64,000 bases of DNA. Origin: Malacoraja senta (taxonomy: Eukaryota). This document shows positions 51,423-61,865 of the stretch, one piece after another; position 1 is the first letter of the stretch, and each line of letters starts with the position of its first letter. A model generated the notes under the pieces. The model searched no databases. It was not told the origin of the DNA and saw only the letters and a list, made by a program, of their open reading frames with translations. The DNA lies in the NCBI GenBank assembly GCA_038087875.1, contig CM075977.1:20026001-20090000 (forward strand). The letters run 5' to 3'. The position numbers and the translations under genes were made by a program.

Positions 51423-52189
51423 TCAGCAGGTCACCTGCTGCAGGTGGATCAGAAAGCAATGGAATAGCCTCAAGAAAATCACAGTATTATTTGACAGAGT
51501 CAACACAGTTTTATGAAGAGAAATCAAGGTTGACAAATCCCTCAGTGGTCTTTGAGTTTGTGGCCAACAGAACAGTTATGGGGAAACCAACAGATGTGTA
51601 CAGCTGGATTTTCTAAAGGCATCACAGAATAAATTGTTTCACAGGATTAAGACTCATGAGACAATGAGTGATATATTTGGATGGATTAAGGCTTGCTCAA
51701 AAACCAGAAAACAGAGGATGTATTAAATGTGTCATTATTAAAGAGGCTGGATGTAACACTGTGGTGTGCAAGGATCTGTTCTGTGGCCTCAGCTGTTTAT
51801 AATTCTTATCAATGGCTCAGATAAAGGATGATTCTAATATACCAGATCTTGAATATTTCAAAAACAAATGAATTTTTCTGTTTTTATTTTGTTCCAACGT
51901 TAGCAATTTTTCCAAACATTTTATTAATGTTTCGGAAAATTGGTTAATTTGCTTAGTAATAAAGCTCAATTAAAAGGTGCACCAACTTCCACTCTTTTAT
52001 ACTGCCTGAGAGCAGCATGCTAAATGTGATGAGCAATGTTGCAAGAGAGAAGGGATTGCACACTTCTGCATTCTCCTCACTAGCAAGTACAAAATTATGA
52101 ATTCAAAAGGGAAATAGGTGACTTGAGGATGGGAGATGAGCACGTGGAAACAGGGAAAGAACTTTCCCAGTCCCTCTCTTTACCATGCT

Positions 52190-52625
52190 CCCTCATATCC
52201 CAGTGTGCACATATTTCTCCCATTGTCTCAAACCCCCCCAGCCACCCCAACCCACCCTACTTCTTCCCATCCCCGAGTCACCTGCTTTCCTTCCACCCCT
52301 CTTTCCCCTCTCCCCTGTCTCTTTCCACCTCTTTCTCCCCTTCAGCTTTACATTTCACTCTTCGTCTTCTCTCCTCATCTGACAAAATTTTGTTTCATTT
52401 TCATCTCTTGTCACTTATTCCATCCATCTGCCAATCACCTCTCCCCCCCCCCCTCTTCCATTCACCTATCACTTGGCGGCATTGTTCCATCCCCATCTCT
52501 CTTTTCCAACTTTCTCTCTTATTCCAATCAGTCTGAAGAAGGGTCTCAATTAGAAATGTTGTCTGCTTATTCCCCCCACAGAAGCTGCCTGATGTGCTGA
52601 CTTCCTCTAGCACTTTGTGTTTTTG
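52190..52625 (+). mobile_element. Penelope 3' region and pLTR
   Basis: Pyrimidine-rich UTR then CAGTCTGAAGAAGGGTCTCAATTAGAAATGTT..CTAGCACTTTGTGT. Confidence 0.7.
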
Positions 52626-52815
52626 CTTTGTTGTTGAACATTGGCTTAACCAATGCTCAACAACAAAGCTCATGTTCATGTTTACTCAAACAACTCTGCT
52701 TTCCCATCACCGTATTCTGTGAAACCATGTAAATGGATGACAGACATTCAGACTGCATACCTTGTCCTTACTGATGAATTTGATGACATCAAACATACCT
52801 GTGAAAGTAAATAAG

Positions 52816-55800
52816 ATGGCGGCGGCGCGGGCACATCGCGACGCCCCGTGTCTCCCAAGAACCCGAGAAATTGGAAAAATAGCGACAATTCCCCTACCTG
52901 TCTCAAGGCTGCTCACACGGAGCAGTCTTGCATTCCTTTCGTACAGCCGACAGGAACTTCTGGACTTCGGTTCCTGCGGCTGCAACAACTTTCTGCTCGA
53001 TCTCCGTCTCGCTCCTGAGCTAGTCAGAGCAGTGGAGCAGCGGAGCCGCGGGGCGGTAGAACGGCAGCGAAACCGCGGGGCGGCAGAACGGCAGTGGAGC
53101 CGCGGGGCGGAACAACGGCAGCGGAGCCGCGGGGCGGTAGGCCAGCGGAGCCGCGGGGTGGTAGAACACCAGCGGAGCCGCGGGGGCGCGGGGCGGCAGA
53201 ACACCAGCGGAGCCGCGATGCTGCGGGGCGGCAGAACACCAGCGCGCACCAAGCCAGCTCGGCCGACCGGAAGCACCAACAGACGGCGACGTGAACGAAA
53301 GCACCGCCGGGGACGCAGAGGTGGGTTAAAGGCCAGGTTAGAGCTCGCCCCACACAGGCTAGCGATTCCTAGCCTTTTCCTCGCCAACGTGCGCTCACTG
53401 GTTAACAAAATGGACGAACTCCGGCTAAGGATCACCTCCCACAACTGGATCAAAGACTGCAGCATCTTGATCCTCACTGAAACTTGGCTCAACACCGACG
53501 TTCCTGACAGCGCCATCCAGCTAACGGGGCGGCATTTACTCCGAGTGGACAGGACAATTGACTCCGGTAAGACCAGAGGTGGAGGTCTGTGCATTTATGT
53601 AAACAAAGCATGGTGCACGGAAACCACCATCATCGAGAGTCACTGCTCAGCTAACCTAGAGTTCCTCTTGGTTAGATGCAGACCGTTCTATCTGCCCAGA
53701 GAGTTTACCTCCACTGTTGTGACTGCAGCCTATATTCCTCCTGATGCTAATGCCAAGCTTGCAATGAAAGATCTGCATTCTGCCATTAGCAAACAACAGA
53801 CTCACAACCCCGAGGCAGCCTTCATTGTTGCGGGTGACTTCAATCACTCCAACCTGAAGACTGTACTCCCCAAATTCCACCAACATGTCTCCTTCGCCAC
53901 TAGAGAAGGCAAGACACTGGACAAAGTCTACACCAACATGGCCGAAGCTTACAAAGCCGTCCCCCTCCCCCACCTTGGACAGTCTGATCACCTCTCATTG
54001 TTCCTGCTCCCAAAGTACTCCCCACTCATCAGACGGGTTAAACCCACTGTGAGGACAGTTAAAGTCTGGTCAGAGGATGCGGACTCCACACTTCAGCAGT
54101 GTTTTGGAAACACTGACTGGAAGGCGTTTGCAGCCCAGGCCACCCTTGACTCCCACACGGACATTGACTCCTATACATCATCTGTTCTGGACTTTATAAA
54201 CTCCACCATCAACAGCGTCACCTCCCTCAAACAGGTGACCATATTCCCGAATCAGAAGCCATGGATGAACAGCGAGGTCAGGCTACTGCTGAAAGCACGG
54301 GACACCGCTTTCAGGTCAGGCGATGCCCGAGCCTATAGTTCATCCAGGGCTAACCTGAAGAAGGGCATAAAGAAGGCCAAGCACTGCCATAAACTCAGGA
54401 TTGAGGAGCACTTCAACAACAACTCCGACCCCCGACGCATGTGGCAAGGCATCCAGGCCATCACGGACTTTAGACCCACCAACACCACCCCCACATCCAG
54501 TAACGCCTCCTTCCTTGAGGAGCTCAACCACTTCTATGGCCGTTTCGATAGGGACAATCGGCAGTTGGCCATCAAGGCGGTGCTCCCTGCCGATCACCAG
54601 CCCCTCTCACTCACCCCCTTCGACGTGTACGTGGCACTGAGTAGGACTAATGCACGTAAGGCTGCTGGCCCCGACGGCATCCCCGGGCGCGTCCTCAGGG
54701 CCTGTGCTGCGCAGCTGACAGACGTCTGGACTGACATCTTCAACCTGTCACTTGCCCAAGCAGTTGTGCCCACGTGCCTTAAATCCACCTCCATCGTGCC
54801 GGTGCCAAAACACTCCACTGCGGCAAGCCTCAACGACTTCCGCCCAGTTGCACTTACTCCCATCATCGCCAAGTGCTTCGAGAGGCTGGTCCTGGCACAC
54901 CTCAAAGGCTGCCTACCCCCCACGTTGGATCCCTATCAGTTTGCCTACCGCAAGAACAGGAGTACGGAGGATGCCATCTCAACGGCACTTCACTCCGCCC
55001 TCTCCCACCTCGACAACAGAGACACTTACGTAAGAATGCTGTTCATCGATTACAGCTCAGCATTCAACACCATCATACCCTCTAAACTGATCACCAAACT
55101 CGGTGACCTGGGCATCGACCCCTCCCTCTGCAACTGGATACTGGACTTTCTAACCAACAGACCCCAGTCTGTTAGGTTAGACAAGCACACCTCTTCAACC
55201 CTCACCCTGAACACCGGCGTTCCACAGGGCTGTGTGCTGAGCCCACTCCTCTACTCCCTCTTCACCTACGACTGCACACCTGTACATGGTACTAACACCA
55301 TCATCAAGTATGCAGATGATACAACGGTGATTGGCCTCATCAGCAACAACGATGAGTCGGCCTATAGGGAGGAGGTCCAGCTCCTAGCAGCATGGTGCGC
55401 TGACAACAACCTGGCCCTTAACTCCAAGAAGACCAAGGAGCTCATTGTAGACTTCAGGAAGTCTAGGGGCGGCATGCACACCCCCATCCACATTAACGGG
55501 AGGGAGGTGGAACGTGTTTCCAGCTTCAGGTTCCTGGGGGTCAACATCTCCGATGACCTCTCTTGGACCAACAATACCTCAACTCTGGTCAAGAAGGCTC
55601 ACCAGCGTCTCTTCTTCCTGAGGAGACTAAAGAAGGTCCATCTGTCTCCTCGGATTCTGGTGAACTTCTACCGCTGCACCATCGAGAGCATCCTTACCAA
55701 CTGCATCACAGTATGGTATGGCAACTGCTCTGTCTCCGACCGGAAAGCACTGCAGAGGGTGGTGAAAATTGCCCAACGCATCACCGGTTCCTCACTCCCC

Positions 55801-55998
55801 ACCATTGAGTCTGTCCAAAGCAAGCGTTGTCTGCGAAGGGTGCTCAGCATCGCCAAGGACTGCTCTCACCCCAACCACAGACTGTTTACCCTCCTACCAT
55901 CCGGGAGGCGCTACAGGTCTCTCCGTTGCCGGACCAGCAGGTCCAGGAACAGCTTCTTCCCTGCGGCGGTTACACTACTCAACACTGTACCTCGGTGA
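52816..55998 (+). CDS. Rex1/Babar APE endonuclease-reverse transcriptase polyprotein, 1060 aa from the first ATG inside the element
   Basis: Uninterrupted frame: [28 protein letters not shown]; [41 protein letters not shown]. Confidence 0.93.
53038..53245 (+). repeat. About 7 imperfect 24-35-bp tandem units (27-bp core) inside the ORF
   Basis: CAGCGGAGCCGCGGGGCGGTAGAACGG-type units encoding QRSRGAVER-like repeats. Confidence 0.9.
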
Positions 55999-56181
55999 CT
56001 GCCAATCACACCCCCCCCCCCCCCCCGGACACTCCTCCCACCAGGATTTATTAGATTAGATTTATTTATTTACTGCTCATATTTATGTCGCTCTTCTAGG
56101 GAGATGCTAACTGCATTTCGTTGTCTCTGTACTGTACACTGCACAATGACAATAAAGTTGAATCTGAATCTGAATCTGAAT

Positions 56182-56320
56182 CATAGACATAAAAAGCTGG
56201 AGTAACTCAGCGGGCAGACAGCATCTCTGGAGAAAGGGAATAGGTGACATTTCGGGTCAAAACTGTTCTTCAGACTGAGAGTCAGGGGAAAACAGAACAA
56301 GAGATATAGATGGTGATATA
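56182..56320 (-). mobile_element. Penelope pLTR
   Basis: AGCTGGAGTAACTCAGCGGGCAGACAGCATCTCTGG..TTCTTCAGACTGA. Confidence 0.8.
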
Positions 56321-56402
56321 GAGGGTACCCGGACGTGGCGTCGAAGGACGAGAAGCCGAAGCAAAGAAGTGGAAGCCAAATAACTGAACGGAAGCTAAGC
56401 CG

Positions 56403-56575
56403 AAAAGCCAACTAACCGAAAGGGTGGGACGCGTAAAAGCCAACTCACCGAAAGGGCGGGACACGTAAAAGCCAGCTCACCGAAACGGCGGGACGCGTAA
56501 AAGCCAGCTCACCGAAAGGGCGGGACGCGTAAAAGCCAGCTCACCGAAAGGCCGCTGTGCCAAAAAGCCAAATAA
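56403..56575. repeat. About 5 x 32-bp CpG-rich tandem repeat
   Basis: AAAAGCCA at 56403, 56435, 56467, 56499, 56531 and 56563. Confidence 0.93.
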
Positions 56576-57253
56576 CGGACATGACATTGCCGGGGGGGGT
56601 GGGACTTGTCAGCAATTGGTCCAGAACCCCGTGTCCATCACATCACTGGCCGGGGGAGATGGGAGGTGGGGGTCATTTTCCCACACAAGACCGCACTGGG
56701 CTGGAGGGTGACTGGGCACTCTGAACCCGAGCACCAAGTTGTAAGCGGCCAAAGGAGCGCATCCCTCGCGACAACCCCCACACTCCCATGGCCACGGCCA
56801 TCCTCCACCTCGTCTCCCCCATGCGGCCGCACTGTGACGGGCTGTCAGTCAGTAGCGCACACACACATGGGGCCGGGTGAAGCAGAGTTGGGGACAGTCT
56901 TGTCCCTCCGTCCACCCAGAGTCACTGACCGTGATGCACTGCCACCGGACCCCAACCCCCACACCAGGGTGATTCACCCCCCGACCCCCGGACCCCGACA
57001 CCCACACCAGGTGATTCACCCACCACCCCCCCCTTGCCACGGGGGCAGACGGCTCGGGGCATTGGCAGCCATAGTAAATCGTTTTTAAAACACGGGGGGA
57101 CACACAAAGTCCCTGGCGGGCCGAAAACAAATGTGCATGACAATGAACAATTTTATCTCCTCCCATTCACCCCCCCCCCCCACTTGACAACAAGAAGCAC
57201 ATTTTATTTATTGTTTAAACACAGTAATACTGTCTGGTTTAAACACCTTGCCT

Positions 57254-60200
57254 CAAGATGGCGCTCCTGAGAGGGCGACGTCGCGGAGCTCTCAGAGTCA
57301 ACCTGCTTTTTTGTCTGTCTTTTGTTGTTTTGTGCCATACTACGGTAATATCAGTAGCAATTAGGAACAGTCAACATGGATTTGTGCCTGGAAGGTAATG
57401 TTTGACTAATCTTCTTGAATTTTTTGAAGAGGTTACTCGGGAAATTGATGAGGGTAAAGCCGTGGATGTTTTATATATGGACTTCAGTAAGGCCTTTGAC
57501 AAGGTTCCTCACGGAAGGTTGGTTAAGAAGGTTCAATGGTTGGGTATTAATGGTGGAGTAGCATGATGGATTCAACAGTGGCTGAATGGGAGATGCCAGA
57601 GAGTAATGGTGGATGGTTGTTTGTCAGGTTGGAGGCCAGTGACTAGTGGGGTGCCACAGGGATCTGTGTTGGGTCCACTGTTGTTTGTCATGTACATCAA
57701 TGATCTGGATGATGGTGTGGTTAATTGGATTAGTAAGTATGCAGATGATACTAAGATAGGTGGGGCTGTGGATAATGAAGTAGATTTTCAAAGTCTACAG
57801 AGAGATTTATGCCGGTTGGAAGAGTGGGCTGAAAGATGGCAGATGGAGTTTAATGCTGATAAGTGTGAGGTGCTACATCTTGGCAGGACAAATCAAAATA
57901 GGACGTACATGGTAAATGGTAGGGAATTGAAGAATGCAGGTGAACAGAGGGATCTTGGAATAACTGTGCACAGTTCCCTGAAAGTGGAATCTCATGTAGA
58001 TAGGGTGGTAAAGAAAGCGTTTGGTGTGCTGGCTTTTATAAATCAGAGCATTGAGTATAGAAGTTGGGATGTAATGTTAAAATTGTACAAGGCATTGGTG
58101 AGGCCAATTCTGGAGTATGGTGTACAATTTTGGTCGCCTAATTATAGGAAGGATGTCAACAAAATAGAGAGAGTACAGAGGAGATTTACTAGAATGTTGC
58201 CTGGGTTTCAGCAACTAAGTTACAGAGAATGGTTGAACAAGTTAGGGCTTTATTCTTTGGAGCGCAGAAGGTTAAGGGGGGACTTGATAGAGGTCTTTAA
58301 AATGATGAGAGGGATAGACAGAGTTGACGTGGATAAGCTTTTCCCACTTAGAGTAGGGAAGATTCAAACAAGGTGACATGACTTGAGAATTAAGGGACAG
58401 AAGTTTAGGGGTAACATGAGGGGGAACTTCTTTACTCAGAGAGTGGTGGCTGTGTGGAATCAGCTTCCAGTGAAGGTGGTGGAGGCAGGTTCGTTTTTAT
58501 CATTTAAAAATAAATTGGATAGTTATATGGACGGGAAAGGAATGGAGGGTTATGGTCTGAACGCAGGTATATGGGACTAGGGGAGAATACGTGTTCGGCA
58601 CGGACTAGAAGGGTCGAGATGGCTGTTTCCGTGCTGTAATTGTTATATGGTTATTATATGGTTATATAGCATGGTCAGCCAACGGCGTCTATGACCGGGC
58701 GACCCTACTACGGCTGAGAGAGTGCAGTCCTTTTGGACATTTAGACCCGAGCACGTTTAACCCCTACCCCTACCCTGAGCTAATACGCTACGGCGACTCG
58801 ATGCTAGGCCGACACCCGGACAACGACAGGCCCAGGCGGAGACGCGGCAGATGGGGAGGGGCCAAACGACGACTCCGGCGCTTGGTTAGCAGTGGAAGGT
58901 TAGCCCTCCCGGTCATACTGTTTGCTAACGTCCAGTCTCTGTTAAATAAGATGGATGAGCTCCATGCTCGGATCTCCACGCAGAGGGACTTACAGGACTG
59001 CTCCATGCTGTGCTTCTGTGAAACATGGCTGGGGGAAAGGACACCCGACGAGGCGATAACACCAGACGGCTACACGGCCTTCAGGGAGGACCGGAGCGCA
59101 ACGGACAGCGGCAAGATCCGCGGCGGAGGAACGGCCGTCCTCGTCAAACAAAGTTGGTGTACCGACTGCAAGCTTATATCTAAATCTTGCTCTGAGAATG
59201 TGGAGTATCTAACTGTGAAGCTACGGCCGTTTTATCTACCCAGAGAACTGCAATGTATTATTGTGAGTGTCGTGTATATTCCCCCTTCCGCCAAAGAAGA
59301 GGGTGCACTCAGGGAGCTACACAACATGATCAATGAGCATGAAAACAAATATCCTGATGCTGCTTTTATTATTCTGGGAGACTTTAATCATTGCAACCTC
59401 AAGAAAAACATACCAAAACTGTATCAGTTTGTGACTTTTCCAACTAGAGGAAATAAGATACTGGACCACTGCTACAGTAATATCAGAAATGCTTTTATAG
59501 CTGAACCAACACCCCACTTCGGCAAGTCTGACCACCTGGCAATTCGGCTCAAGCCCACCTACACCAAGAGGCTTAAGGCACAGCCAGTCACAGTCAGAAC
59601 TGTTAACACCTGGACGGACAGTGCACAGGCTAGCCTGCAGGGATGTTTAGAGGCTACAGACTGGAACATCTTTAAGGTGGCCACAGATGACATTCATGAA
59701 TACACAGAGGTGTGAGTGACTACATCAGCTGGTGCACATCTATATGTGCCCCTCCCAGAACTGTGCGTGTGTTTCCAAACCAGAAACCTTGGTTCAATGG
59801 AAAAATAAAACAGAAGATCAGGAAAAGGCAGGAAGCTTTTAAGTCATGAGATCAAGGGGAGTACAAGAAAGCCCGGTTCGAGCTACAGAAGTCCATCAGA
59901 GCTGCAAAGAGGGCATATTCCCCAAAACTTGAAAGCTTTTACCTAATTAACAACACACGCAGTATGTGGCAGGGAATCCAAGCAGTCACAAACTACAAGA
60001 AAACAGTACCAACCACAGACCCCCAGGATGTCACCTTCCCAGACAGCCTTAATACCTTCTATACCAGGTTTGACAGACTGAACACAGACACCCCCTCAAA
60101 AGCCCCCTGCAACCCCACAGACACTGTCTTTCAGGTGACACCCATACAGGTCCTGAAAGCTCTGAGGCTGGTGAACCCCCACAAGGCTGTGGGACCAGAT

Positions 60201-61865
60201 GGCATCCCTCCTAAAGTTCTGAAGGCCTGTGCAGAACAACTCACTGGAGTGTATGTAGACATCTTCAATCTGTCTTTAAACCAAGCAGTGGTCCCCCGTA
60301 TTTTTTTATTTTCCACCATCATTCCAGTTCCAAAAAAAACAAATCCATCCACCCTGAATGACTTCAGGCCAGTGGCACTCACACCAGTTGCCATGGAGTG
60401 TCTAGAAAACTGGTTCTCACACATATCAATCACATGGTCCCGGGCACGATCGACCCCCTCCAGTTCGCCTACCGCCCCAACCGCTCAGTGGACGACGCAG
60501 TGGCCATTGTTCTACACCACATCCTGCAACACCTGGACAGCAGAGGAACATACGTCAGAACGCTGTTCCTGGATTACAGTTCGGCTTTTAATACCATTCG
60601 CCCGGGCAGGCTGACTGAGAAGCTGACAGACCTCGGTGTCCCGACTCCCACCTGCAACTGGATCTTGGATTTCCTGACTGAAAGACCACAGGTGGTGAGG
60701 ATGGGAAGGAGGGTGTCTGCAGAGCTCACTGTCAGCACAGGATCACCACAAGGCTGCTGTCTCAGTCCCAAACTTTTCACCCTGTACACACATGACTGTG
60801 TCTCCACCCAGGAAAATACCATCATTATTAAGTATGCGGATGACACCACCATCCTGGGCCTCATCAAGGGGGGGGGGCGAGTCGGGCTACAGGAATCTGG
60901 TGAACGACATTCTTGCCTATGGTGAGGTGAACGACCTAAGCCTCAACACAGACAAGACAAGAGAAATAATAATGGACTTCAGAAAAATTCCAACCCCCCT
61001 GCAGCCCCTCATCATCAAGTGGACTGTGGTGGAGAGGGCTGACAGTTACAGATACCTGGGATTACAAGTAACATCAGATCTGAACTGGACTTTGAACACT
61101 GCCGCAACAGTGAAAAAATCCCAGCAGAGACTGTACTTCATCAGGCTGCTCAGAAAAGCTGGTCTGCACTGTCGCCCTCTCACCCAGGTCTACAAAGGAC
61201 TGATAGAGAGCATCCTCACCACAGGCATCACGGTGTGGTATGGAAACACCACACAGACAGAGAGGAAGGCTCTGCAAAGAGTCATAAATACTGCAGAGAG
61301 GATTATCAGAACGGAACTTCCCTCCATGGAAACAATCTACACACAGCGCTGTCAAAAAAGAGCAGAGAGAATCATCAGAGACACACTACATCCAGCTCAC
61401 TCCCTGCTCAAACACAAAAACTGCACATACAACCTCAGGCACAGACGAGCGGACAGCATCGCCACAAACAGAACACGCTTTTTCAAGAGCTTCTTCCCTG
61501 CCACAGTGAGACTCTTGGCCAAAACAAAATGAACTGATGTCCTGACCCACCTCATAACATATCATATTATATCATATTATATTGTCTCCTGGGCCTTTGC
61601 AATTTACAATGCAATCGACACTTTTATATAAGGTTTGTGTAATTTACAATGCTCTTCACTTCCCCTTTATATAGGGTTTTAGGCACTTTCTTTCTTTCTT
61701 TCTTCTTTTTTTATTCCTAGAGAAGTATATGTTTTTATAGATTATGTGTCTTTCTGTGTGTCTTTAACTTGACTTGACTTGACTCTCTGAACAACCGCAC
61801 AAGAGTTCCTATGTGTGTAAGCACAAATGGCAAATAAAGTTTTTTGATTTTGATTTGATTTTTGG
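57254..61865 (+). mobile_element. Full-length but disrupted Rex1/Babar LINE of a second family, with a CR1 in its 5' end
   Basis: Starts CAAGATGGCG; APE ([27 protein letters not shown]) and RT (KAVGPDGI, QFAYR, KYADD) in four frame-shifted pieces; (TTTGA)n tail; candidate TSD TTGCCT at 57248-57253 and 61866-61871. Confidence 0.9.
57360..58666 (+). mobile_element. 5'-truncated young CR1
   Basis: Colinear with 17640-18950 (about 17 differences by eye, three creating stops); TAGCA duplicated at 57355-57359 and 58667-58671. Confidence 0.95.

What the first reader, a model, noticed from the sequence alone, without database searches (positions are those of the whole stretch)
52942..58710. eIF4E-binding-like motif (YxRxxLL) conserved in the N-terminal leader of two divergent Rex1 families
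Seen: YSRQELL (52942-52962) and YDRATLL (58690-58710) occupy equivalent positions upstream of PEL(V/I)R, the basic RRGRxGG patch and the APE domain, while the rest of the two leaders shows no clear similarity. Known: YxxxxL-hydrophobic is the canonical eIF4E-binding motif (4E-BP YDRKFL, eIF4G YDREFLL). Inference: the nascent LINE protein could bind cap-bound eIF4E or 4EHP on its own mRNA. That would give cis-preference or translational shut-off in a LINE that has no ORF1. The motif is short and could be a structural coincidence.
Basis: partly seen in the sequence, partly recalled or inferred. Interest (0 to 1): 0.75.

Follow-up and report, generated by a model that had tools for sequence, protein, structure and literature searches.

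The report
eIF4E-binding-like motif in LINE leaders
A short tyrosine-leucine motif near the start of a jumping-gene protein is real, is conserved from molluscs to fish and looks like the docking site for the cell's mRNA cap-binding factor eIF4E, but binding has not been tested.

Summary
YSRQELL (52942-52962) and YDRATLL (58690-58710) are in frame with the endonuclease domain. Each lies 75 residues upstream of it once a copy-specific tandem-repeat insertion is discounted.

I retrieved relatives by the endonuclease domain alone, blind to the motif. Y-x4-L-hydrophobic sits at that position in 54 of 70 and 36 of 59 leaders, against about 1% expected. The hosts named for proteins carrying it are teleosts, a snake, a limpet and a crinoid; the window's host is reportedly a skate.

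Y and the Arg two residues later are the only columns at least 90% conserved upstream of the basic patch. dN/dS at the motif is 0.15, against 0.12 in the endonuclease and 0.45-0.53 in the flanking leader. The leader is therefore translated and the motif is selected as protein.

Two profiles of the motif, searched against all PDB sequences, returned almost only eIF4E ligands: 4E-BP1, 4E-BP2, CUP and Leish4E-IP1. Some families carry YSREFLL, the core of a published peptide that binds eIF4E at about 100 nM. AlphaFold2 shows an isolated short helix in a disordered leader.

Binding is unproven. About 70% of leaders have a signal-peptide-like segment just upstream, which could place the motif in the ER lumen. 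I found no prior report.

The parts
52813..52824 (+). Start context AAG ATG GCG GCG of copy 1 (TISU/YY1-like). The element's 5' edge lies at most a few tens of nt upstream.
   Evidence: The 5' flanks of five related loci are unrelated right up to AAG|ATGGCG. DNA depth jumps from 13.7 to about 5850 between 52795 and the 52796-52869 bin.
52816..55998 (+). Copy 1: an intact single ORF of 1060 codons (leader, APE endonuclease, RT, C-terminal domain).
   Evidence: Pfam Exo_endo_phos, RVT_1 and ALKBH8_N. AF2 body pLDDT >90. Best structural matches are human LINE-1 ORF2p.
52942..52971 (+). [10 protein letters not shown], the canonical-type eIF4E-binding-like motif of copy 1 (core 52942-52962).
   Evidence: AF2 helix 45-53 with pLDDT about 61 in a leader otherwise below 50. 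dN/dS 0.15.
53002..53028 (+). LRLAPELVR, the second conserved hydrophobic block, 20-28 aa after the Tyr. A candidate auxiliary (non-canonical-type) contact.
   Evidence: Helical with pLDDT about 68 in the P0110 model.
53037..53244 (+). 27-bp and 35-bp tandem repeats that insert 69 aa of Arg/Gly/Gln-rich leader, specific to this copy or lineage.
   Evidence: Seen as a gap in all teleost relatives. Low read depth there. pLDDT below 50.
53281..53325 (+). Arginine-rich basic patch [15 protein letters not shown], a probable NLS and/or RNA-binding arm.
   Evidence: dN/dS 0.16. Weak REV-like arginine-rich Pfam hits in relatives.
53374..54075 (+). APE-type endonuclease domain of copy 1.
   Evidence: Pfam PF03372 at residues 191-392. 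AF2 and Foldseek match to the LINE-1 EN domain.
54802..55548 (+). Reverse transcriptase domain of copy 1.
   Evidence: Pfam RVT_1 at residues 663-911, E 2.7e-33.
57258..57360 (+). True N-terminus of copy 2: MALLRGRRRGALRVN followed by a hydrophobic run, again starting at AAG ATG GCG. The end coordinate is approximate.
   Evidence: tblastn with the nearest relative P0280 and direct translation.
57361..58668 (+). Nested 5'-truncated LINE (RT C-terminal half, (TTATATGG)n tail) that splits the leader of copy 2. Boundaries are approximate.
   Evidence: Pfam RVT_1 on 57606-58373. Tail repeat at 58643-58665..
58690..58719 (+). YDRATLLRLR, the motif of copy 2 (core 58690-58710). It matches the extended consensus, including Arg at position 10.
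58765..58788 (+). YPYPELIR, the second block of copy 2.
58834..58860 (+). Basic patch RRRRGRWGG of copy 2.
58915..59715 (+). APE domain of copy 2 up to its first break. The rest of the copy continues in shifted frames to about 61532.

Best explanation
The motif is a translated short linear motif, Y-[S/D/T/N]-R-x-x-L-L-x-[I/L/V]-[G/R]. It is strongly selected and lies in the intrinsically disordered N-terminal leader of a large clade of single-ORF, APE-type LINEs (Rex1/Babar-like).

Most likely it folds into a short helix on the dorsal surface of an eIF4E-family cap-binding protein, as the canonical motifs of eIF4G, 4E-BPs, CUP and Leish4E-IP1 do. The conserved hydrophobic block 20-30 residues downstream may add a second contact.

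The ORF starts within a few nucleotides of the element's 5' end. The eIF4E on the cap of the element's own mRNA would therefore be the nearest target when the motif leaves the ribosome. This could tether the new protein to its own RNA (cis-preference) and compete with eIF4G to reduce further initiation.

Shown here: the existence of the motif, its position, conservation and protein-level selection, its disordered and helical context, and its sequence match to proven eIF4E ligands.

Inferred: binding itself, which eIF4E paralogue is involved, and the consequences for the element.
For: (1) Conservation blind to the motif: 54/70 and 36/59 leaders. Named hosts of proteins carrying it are teleosts, a snake, the limpet Patella and the crinoid Antedon; the window's host is reportedly a skate.
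(2) Y and the R at +2 are the only columns at least 90% conserved upstream of the basic patch. L at +5 is 89%, a hydrophobic residue at +6 is 97%, and I/L/V/F at +8 is about 95%.
(3) dN/dS is 0.15 at the motif, 0.12 in APE and 0.45-0.53 in the flanking leader, with similar dS throughout. The two window copies differ at synonymous sites in all four key codons.
(4) It fits the published extended consensus YX(R/K)X2L-phi-X2(R/K/Q) at positions 1, 3, 6 and 7 (PMC8558276).
(5) Profile searches against 177,635 PDB sequences. The short profile's four best hits are 4E-BP1, Leish4E-IP1, 4E-BP2 and 4E-BP1. The long profile gives only four hits, namely CUP, 4E-BP1, Leish4E-IP1 and 4E-BP1.
(6) The YSREFLL core of several families is identical to the eIF4G1-D5S peptide (Kd about 100 nM, against about 520-580 nM for wild type). 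Ser or Thr at +1 raises affinity, and peptide residue 12 (= +8) packs on eIF4E (PMC3477164).
(7) AF2, two families: an isolated helix at the motif (pLDDT about 61-62) in a leader otherwise below 50. It was not predicted with confidence, as a helix packed on the body would be; contacts could not be inspected.
(8) No ORF1, and an ATG at the element's 5' edge.
Against: - There is no binding data.
- The E-values of the PDB hits are marginal (0.09-1.1), as expected for a motif of about 10 residues.
- A Pfam scan of 62 leaders found no 4E-BP or 4E-T family, so any relation is motif-level convergence, not homology.
- Position 10 of the extended consensus is Gly in 63% of teleost leaders. R/K/Q appears in about half of the divergent set only.
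- About 70% of leaders carry a hydrophobic run (median 12 aa) ending about 8 aa before the Tyr, and it looks like a cleavable signal peptide. If it works as one, the motif would enter the ER lumen, away from eIF4E.
- Some lineages keep Y and L but have R/H/Y at the hydrophobic position (P0146, P0153, P0186, P0239).
- Y-x4-L-hydrophobic is necessary but not sufficient for eIF4E binding.
Confidence: 0.42

Rival explanations
1. The motif is a helical docking site for a different partner, working together with the signal-peptide-like segment. The hydrophobic N-terminus would target or anchor the nascent protein and its mRNA at the ER. The adjacent amphipathic helix would bind a membrane, a chaperone or a lumenal or ER-surface factor. 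The likeness to eIF4E ligands would then be coincidental.
For: 50 of 72 leaders have an uncharged hydrophobic run (median 12 aa) starting near residue 13 and ending about 8 aa before the Tyr, often followed by small residues typical of signal-peptidase sites. The hydrophobic arc of the helix (Y0, L5, L6, I8) is wider than eIF4E contact strictly needs. Some lineages lose the hydrophobic +6 residue but keep Y, L and +8.
Against: The hydrophobic run is absent or weak in about 30% of leaders that keep the motif, including the intact window copy 1. An endonuclease/RT has no known business in the ER lumen. No alternative partner motif fits the register: LIR, YxxPhi, dileucine, BH3 and NES were checked by inspection. 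The PDB profile searches returned no other ligand class.
Confidence: 0.3
2. The motif is a structural or self-association helix of the leader. It would pack on the element's own APE/RT body, form a small helical hairpin with block 2, or mediate oligomerisation or RNA chaperoning together with the basic patch. This would be an ORF1-substitute function with no host partner.
For: Two short helices (motif and block 2) separated by a conserved spacing of about 7-20 aa are predicted at moderate confidence (pLDDT 62 and 68 in P0110). The Y-to-block-2 and Y-to-APE distances are conserved. The arginine-rich patch lies next to them.
Against: AF2 with 56-57 diverse sequences does not predict the leader with confidence, as it would a segment packed on the well-predicted body. 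The leader stays below 50 pLDDT apart from the two short helices. The flanks evolve fast (dN/dS 0.45-0.53) and differ in length between families, which is typical of a linear motif and not of a folded domain.
Confidence: 0.17
3. The conservation is at the nucleic-acid level (internal promoter or 5' RNA structure), and the amino-acid motif is a by-product.
For: The region lies within 130 nt of the element's 5' end, where LINE internal promoters sit. The very N-terminal MAAR/MAL residues do follow a DNA motif, AAGATGGCG.
Against: dS at the motif (0.96) is as high as in APE (1.06), while dN is 6-fold lower than dS. The key codons differ synonymously between copies: TAC/TAT, CGA/CGG, CTT/CTA, CTG/CTA. 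The motif is kept across phyla with unrelated nucleotide sequence, and the frame is maintained through indels.
Confidence: 0.03
4. The two copies match a loose pattern by chance.
For: The pattern is short. It occurs about once per 3300 positions in these proteins.
Against: 90 of 129 independently retrieved leaders have it at the same place, against about 1% expected.
Confidence: 0.01

Closest known systems
Canonical eIF4E-binding motif of eIF4G and 4E-BP1-3 (YDREFLL / YDRKFLM; extended consensus YX(R/K)X2L-phi-X2(R/K/Q))
   Same: Tyr, Arg at position 3, Leu and a hydrophobic residue at positions 6-7. Frequent basic residues upstream. Located in a disordered region and predicted to be a short helix. 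A hydrophobic block follows downstream, as non-canonical motifs do.
   Different: No homology outside the motif. Position 10 is mostly Gly. The motif sits at the N-terminus of a 1000-aa transposon enzyme, usually just after a signal-peptide-like segment. Binding is untested.
Affinity-optimised eIF4E peptides eIF4G1-D5S (KKRYSREFLLGF, about 100 nM) and VL-PHAGESOL (KKRYSRDQLLAL, 37 nM), PMC3477164
   Same: The core YSREFLL is identical in LINE proteins P0110, P0113, P0114, P0119, P0121, P0213 and P0264. YSRDQLF, YSRQDLL and YSREQLL occur in others. The LINE preference for Ser/Thr at +1 and Leu/Ile/Phe at +8 matches the substitutions that raise affinity.
   Different: The peptides are synthetic 12-mers tested on human eIF4E. 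The natural leaders have Asp/Glu-Ile/Val-Gly after the core, not Gly/Ala-Phe/Leu.
Message-specific eIF4E-interacting proteins: Drosophila CUP (4AXG) and Leishmania 4E-IP1 (5WB5)
   Same: These are among the best PDB matches of the LINE motif profiles: SYTRSRLMDI and MYTREELLRI against LINE SYTRQELLDI and YTRSSLLDL. These proteins hold particular mRNAs in a repressed, cap-bound state, the kind of role proposed here.
   Different: They are cellular regulators brought to mRNAs by other RNA-binding proteins. Here the binder would be encoded by the very mRNA it captures.
Human LINE-1 ORF2p
   Same: Same enzyme architecture (APE endonuclease, RT, C-terminal domain). Top Foldseek hits have E about 5e-29. 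It faces the same need for cis-preference.
   Different: From general knowledge, L1 ORF2p starts directly with the endonuclease and has no comparable leader. L1 also has an ORF1p, and its cis-preference is attributed to co-translational binding at the poly(A) tail. The clade studied here has no ORF1 and a 110-190-aa leader.
Single-ORF APE-type LINEs with 2A-like sequences in the N-terminal leader (PMC3708506)
   Same: That work also concludes that the N-terminal region of single-ORF LINEs (Rex1, L2, CR1, Crack, Ingi) carries separate, ORF1-replacing functions that affect translation.
   Different: No 2A motif is present in the window copies or the relatives examined. The paper does not describe a Tyr-Leu motif or any link to eIF4E.

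Membership tests
eIF4E-interacting proteins with a canonical 4E-binding motif | Core Tyr-X4-Leu-hydrophobic | tested here: met
   Both window copies. 54/70 and 36/59 relatives retrieved blind to the motif.
eIF4E-interacting proteins with a canonical 4E-binding motif | Arg/Lys at motif position 3 (salt bridge to eIF4E; PMC8558276) | tested here: met
   R/K in 59/62 aligned leaders and in 33/36 of the divergent set.
eIF4E-interacting proteins with a canonical 4E-binding motif | Arg/Lys/Gln at motif position 10 | tested here: inconclusive
   Gly in 39/62 and R/K in 11/62 of the teleost-rich set. R/K/Q in 19/36 of the divergent set. Copy 2 has Arg and copy 1 has Gly.
eIF4E-interacting proteins with a canonical 4E-binding motif | Motif in an intrinsically disordered segment that forms a helix on binding | tested here: met
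   AF2, two families: a short helix at the motif with pLDDT about 61-62 and flanks below 50, not predicted with confidence as part of the folded body. This is a prediction only.
eIF4E-interacting proteins with a canonical 4E-binding motif | Non-canonical motif 12-30 aa downstream that contacts the lateral surface of eIF4E | tested here: inconclusive
   A conserved hydrophobic block (LRLxPEIxR, IPxEIAR or LGLLRRP) lies 11-29 aa after the Tyr in those leaders that match the P-x-[E/D/G/N]-hydrophobic pattern (19 of 54 and 19 of 36; mostly 22-27 aa), and is helical in P0110. Whether it touches eIF4E cannot be told.
eIF4E-interacting proteins with a canonical 4E-binding motif | Physical, Tyr/Leu-dependent binding to eIF4E and competition with eIF4G | not testable with these tools
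   No complex prediction or assay was available. Indirect support only: the core is identical to a peptide measured at about 100 nM.
4E-BP (PF05456) / 4E-T (PF10477) protein families | Sequence homology to the family profile | tested here: not met
   Neither family appeared in a Pfam scan of 62 leaders at E<=10. The likeness is confined to the motif.
Rex1/Babar clade of APE-type LINEs | Single ORF with an N-terminal APE endonuclease and an RT, and no ORF1 | tested here: met
   Pfam domains. Fold match to LINE ORF2p. 5' flanks unrelated up to the ATG. Repeat-depth step at the ATG. The upstream ORFs at 52123-52600 have no family and are separated from the element by single-copy DNA.
Rex1/Babar clade of APE-type LINEs | Placement inside the Rex1 clade in an RT phylogeny with reference elements | not tested
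   No reference Rex1/Babar sequences were available in the tools.
Rex1/Babar clade of APE-type LINEs | Match to the standard Rex1 PCR primer sites (RTX1-F1/R1, PMC3728117) | tested here: inconclusive
   No DNA match within 3 mismatches; 7 and 11 mismatches at the homologous sites. The encoded peptides agree: YSSAFNT against FSSAFNT, and QRLFFLR against SRLFLLR.
Cleavable ER signal peptide | Positively charged n-region, 7-15-aa hydrophobic h-region, c-region with small residues at -1 and -3 | tested here: inconclusive
   50/72 leaders have a hydrophobic uncharged run (median 12 aa) with a net +1 N-flank. No signal-peptide predictor was available. The run is weak in window copy 1.

The most novel reading that the evidence does not exclude
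LINEs of this clade encode their own 4E-BP-like module. The nascent polyprotein would seize the eIF4E sitting on the cap of the very mRNA being translated, whose AUG lies only a few nucleotides from the cap. This would give an ORF1-less LINE its cis-preference. It would also switch the RNA from translation to use as a reverse-transcription template by displacing eIF4G. The signal-peptide-like segment might add SRP-dependent pausing or ER localisation. That would make it a transposon-encoded, self-directed cap-capture mechanism conserved across Bilateria.
Probability: 0.2. Interest if true: 0.9.

Novelty: new variant of a known kind. Interest (0 to 1): 0.74.

Why it matters
How LINEs that lack an ORF1 protein secure their own RNA (cis-preference), and how any LINE RNA passes from being translated to being reverse transcribed, are open questions.

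A motif that is conserved across phyla, selected as protein and matches high-affinity eIF4E ligands gives a concrete hypothesis that can be tested by mutation. The test is a peptide-binding assay plus two point mutants. It would also be the first host-factor docking motif defined for this large LINE clade, which is abundant in fish genomes.

If the motif binds something else, it still marks the most constrained site of an otherwise fast-evolving leader. Together with the signal-peptide-like segment, it points to an undescribed co-translational step in the life cycle of these elements.

Tried and rejected
- Single-peptide phmmer of a leader segment against PDB gave no hits. Only profiles were sensitive enough.
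- A Pfam scan of 62 leaders gave no 4E-BP or 4E-T family, only weak arginine-rich (REV-like) matches.
- An ESM Atlas feature search of the leader gave nothing at 0.9 or above and no informative family.
- A DNA search for the Rex1 PCR primers gave no match within 3 mismatches, so clade membership rests on protein-level likeness only.
- Laying RNA reads gave low two-stranded coverage of the leader in poly(A) RNA of related species, and no transcription start could be called.
- Literature searches for a 4E-binding motif in a retrotransposon protein, for signal peptides in non-LTR elements and for descriptions of full-length Rex1/Babar found nothing relevant.
- Other linear-motif classes were considered by inspection and rejected because the register does not fit: YxxPhi sorting signal, acidic dileucine, LIR, clathrin box, BH3 (which needs Y-x3-L), class-1 NES (seen in one family only), and the 4EHP-specific YxYx4L-phi (the -2 position is not conserved).
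- The DNA-level explanation was rejected on dN/dS and synonymous codon differences.
- Packing of the leader on the enzyme body is not supported by AF2 confidence.
Copy 2 was read only in its separate open pieces.

Full report
**What is in the window**

Copy 1 is an intact ORF of 1060 codons (52816-55998, + strand). Pfam finds an Exo_endo_phos (APE) domain, RVT_1 and the ALKBH8_N signature. Its AlphaFold2 model is confident from residue 181 onward, and its best structural matches are human LINE-1 ORF2p (E about 5e-29).

YSRQELL is encoded at 52942-52962, residues 43-49. Downstream come LRLAPELVR (53002-53028), a 69-aa insertion made by 27/35-bp tandem repeats (53037-53244), the basic patch [15 protein letters not shown] (53281-53325) and the APE start (53374).

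Copy 2 is degraded. Its reading frame is broken several times after 59715. Its leader is split by a nested 5'-truncated LINE at about 57360-58668, which carries the C-terminal half of an RT and a (TTATATGG)n tail. Its real start is the ATG at 57258, encoding MALLRGRRRGALRVN followed by a hydrophobic run.

YDRATLL is at 58690-58710, followed by YPYPELIR, RRRRGRWGG and the APE start at 58915. The Tyr lies 75 residues before the APE start in copy 2, and also 75 in copy 1 once the repeat insertion is removed. BLASTP aligns the two copies only from the basic patch onward, at 47% identity.

**Is it more than chance?**

I retrieved relatives using only the APE region, so that the motif could not bias the sample.

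With copy 1's APE as the query, 70 proteins had at least 95 residues before the APE start. Of these, 54 have a strict Y-x4-L-[LIVMFW] 71-94 residues upstream, and 7 more have a conservative variant (F for Y; I, V or M for L). Most of the rest are gene-model fusions.

With copy 2's leader-plus-APE piece (348 aa, of which about 21% is leader) searched against 1.84 billion cluster representatives, 36 of 59 leaders have the strict motif.

In the bodies of the same proteins the strict pattern occurs at 3.0e-4 per position, and at 3.2e-5 with R/K at position 3. That is about 1% expected per window.

Named hosts include many teleosts, the snake Ahaetulla, the limpet Patella and the crinoid Antedon. 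The motif is thus ancient within this LINE clade.

**What is conserved**

In a 62-sequence leader alignment, Y and the Arg two residues later are the only columns at least 90% conserved upstream of the basic patch. Position by position:

| Position | Residues |
|---|---|
| 0 | Y, 58/62 |
| +1 | S/D/T/N only (helix N-cap residues) |
| +2 | R, 58/62 |
| +3, +4 | free |
| +5 | L, 55/62 |
| +6 | L/I/F/V/M, 60/62 |
| +8 | I/L/V/F, 59/62 |
| +9 | G (39) or R (9) |

A second hydrophobic block follows: LRLxPEIxR, IPxEIARPPGSPW or LRDLGLLRRP. Where it matches the P-x-[E/D/G/N]-hydrophobic pattern (19 of 54 and 19 of 36 leaders) it lies 11-29 residues after the Tyr, mostly 22-27.

**Is the leader translated?**

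Codon alignments of copy 1 with five related loci fetched with their DNA give the pooled values below.

| Region | dN/dS |
|---|---|
| N-terminal 38 residues | 0.45 |
| Motif | 0.15 |
| Linker and block 2 | 0.53 |
| Basic patch | 0.16 |
| APE | 0.12 |

dS is similar everywhere, at 0.56-1.06. The two window copies differ synonymously at all four key codons. The constraint is on the protein, not on DNA or RNA.

The 5' flanks of these loci and of both window copies are unrelated right up to AAG|ATGGCG. In a DNA run the depth jumps from single-copy (13.7) to about 5850 between 52795 and the next bin. The element therefore begins at most a few tens of nucleotides before the ATG, and there is no ORF1. 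Poly(A) RNA reads of related species cover the leader, including the motif, at low depth on both strands. No start site could be called.

**How like an eIF4E-binding motif is it?**

A published review gives the extended consensus YX(R/K)X2L-phi-X2(R/K/Q), with the position-3 Arg/Lys making a salt bridge to eIF4E (PMC8558276). The LINE motif meets positions 1, 3, 6 and 7. It meets position 10 only in part.

As a blind test I searched two profiles against all 177,635 distinct PDB sequences.
- The 25-column profile returned, in order, a 4E-BP1 peptide (E 0.094), Leish4E-IP1 (5WB5; E 0.11), 4E-BP2 and 4E-BP1. One unrelated enzyme and two eIF4E chains followed. The identity of 5WB5 was confirmed.
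- The 54-column profile returned only four sequences: Drosophila CUP, 4E-BP1, Leish4E-IP1 and 4E-BP1.

The E-values are marginal, as they must be for ten residues, but no other ligand class competes.

A phage-display and peptide study (PMC3477164) measured these affinities for eIF4E:

| Peptide | Kd |
|---|---|
| KKRYDREFLLGF (wild-type eIF4G1) | about 520-580 nM |
| KKRYSREFLLGF | about 100 nM |
| KKRYTREFLLGF | about 105-110 nM |
| KKRYSRDQLLAL | 37 nM |

In that study peptide residue 12 (our +8) packs on eIF4E. Several LINE families carry exactly YSREFLL (P0110, P0113, P0114, P0119, P0121, P0213, P0264). Others carry YSRDQLF, YSRQDLL, YSREQLL, YDREQLL or YTRQELL. The LINE preferences at +1 and +8 thus coincide with affinity-raising choices. 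The Pfam scan shows no homology to the 4E-BP or 4E-T families, so this is a motif-level likeness.

**Structural context**

AlphaFold2 was run on full-length copy 1 with 57 sequences and on P0110 with 56 sequences.
- In copy 1 the leader is below pLDDT 50, except for a short helix over the motif (residues 45-53, about 61).
- In P0110 the motif helix scores about 62 and a second helix over block 2 scores about 68.

Neither helix is predicted with the confidence expected if it packed against the enzyme body; contacts could not be inspected. This is the usual picture of a binding motif that folds on its partner.

**The main difficulty**

About 70% of leaders have a strongly hydrophobic 15-residue window. 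In 50 of 72 there is an uncharged hydrophobic run (median 12 residues) that starts near residue 13 and ends about 8 residues before the Tyr, often followed by small residues. This looks like a cleavable signal peptide. If it is one, the motif would be translocated away from eIF4E.

The run is weak or absent in about 30% of leaders that keep the motif, including intact copy 1. The motif's selection therefore does not depend on it. The two features may belong to one co-translational mechanism or to competing fates, and I cannot decide which.

**Verdict**

- About 0.42: the motif's selected function is to bind an eIF4E-family protein.
- About 0.30: it binds another partner, in concert with the signal-like segment.
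- About 0.17: it has a self-association or structural role.

I found no paper that links a retrotransposon protein to a 4E-binding motif or describes this leader. The earlier 2A study reached the general idea that the leaders of single-ORF LINEs carry ORF1-like functions.

Noticed in passing
window 52813-52824 and 57255-57266; L001, L002, L004, L005 at 1498-1512: Both window copies and four teleost relatives start their ORF in AAG ATG GCG (G/A/C), a TISU/YY1-like context. The upstream flanks are unrelated right up to it, so the 5' UTR is only a few nucleotides long. The conserved MAAR N-terminus probably reflects this DNA motif.
   Followed up: partly
window 57258-57360; leaders of P0001-P0009, P0138, P0142-P0148, P0195 and others: Most leaders have a signal-peptide-like segment: a basic n-region, a hydrophobic run of 9-14 aa and small residues after it. 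It ends about 8 aa before the Tyr motif. This is odd for a nuclear endonuclease/RT. It is weak in intact copy 1.
   Followed up: partly
window 53037-53244: 27-bp and 35-bp tandem repeats lie inside the coding leader of copy 1 and add 69 Arg/Gly/Gln-rich residues without breaking the frame, although 35 is not a multiple of 3. They are absent from all teleost relatives and poorly covered by reads of related species.
   Followed up: partly
window about 57361-58668: A 5'-truncated LINE of another clade (RT C-terminal half, FFTQRVV-type end, (TTATATGG)n tail) is nested in the leader of copy 2, between the hydrophobic segment and the Tyr motif.
   Followed up: partly
window 52816-55998 against P0001, P0003, P0004: Copy 1, in what is reportedly a skate genome, is about 70% identical in protein over its full length to elements of teleosts (hake, carp relatives, loach). 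This is high for hosts that diverged so long ago, and horizontal transfer of this lineage is worth checking.
   Followed up: no
window 56159-56182 and 61552-61583: Short tandem repeats, (TGAATC)4 and (TCATA)n/(ATATCATATT)n, lie just after the 3' ends of copy 1 and copy 2. They are probably the elements' microsatellite-like tails.
   Followed up: no
window 56403-56571: A 32-bp tandem repeat (4.7 copies, 94% match) and further repeats at 56945-57030 lie in the roughly 1-kb spacer between the two LINE copies. Their nature is unknown.
   Followed up: no
window 52500-52647: A different, very high-copy repeat (DNA word depth above 20,000 in run X15) ends about 170 bp upstream of copy 1. It overlaps ORFs at 52123-52600 that match no Pfam family.
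   Followed up: partly
P0146, P0153, P0186, P0239: Some divergent lineages keep Y-S-x-x-x-L but have Arg, His or Tyr at the position that must be hydrophobic for eIF4E contact. These are natural variants that could help discriminate between partners.
   Followed up: no
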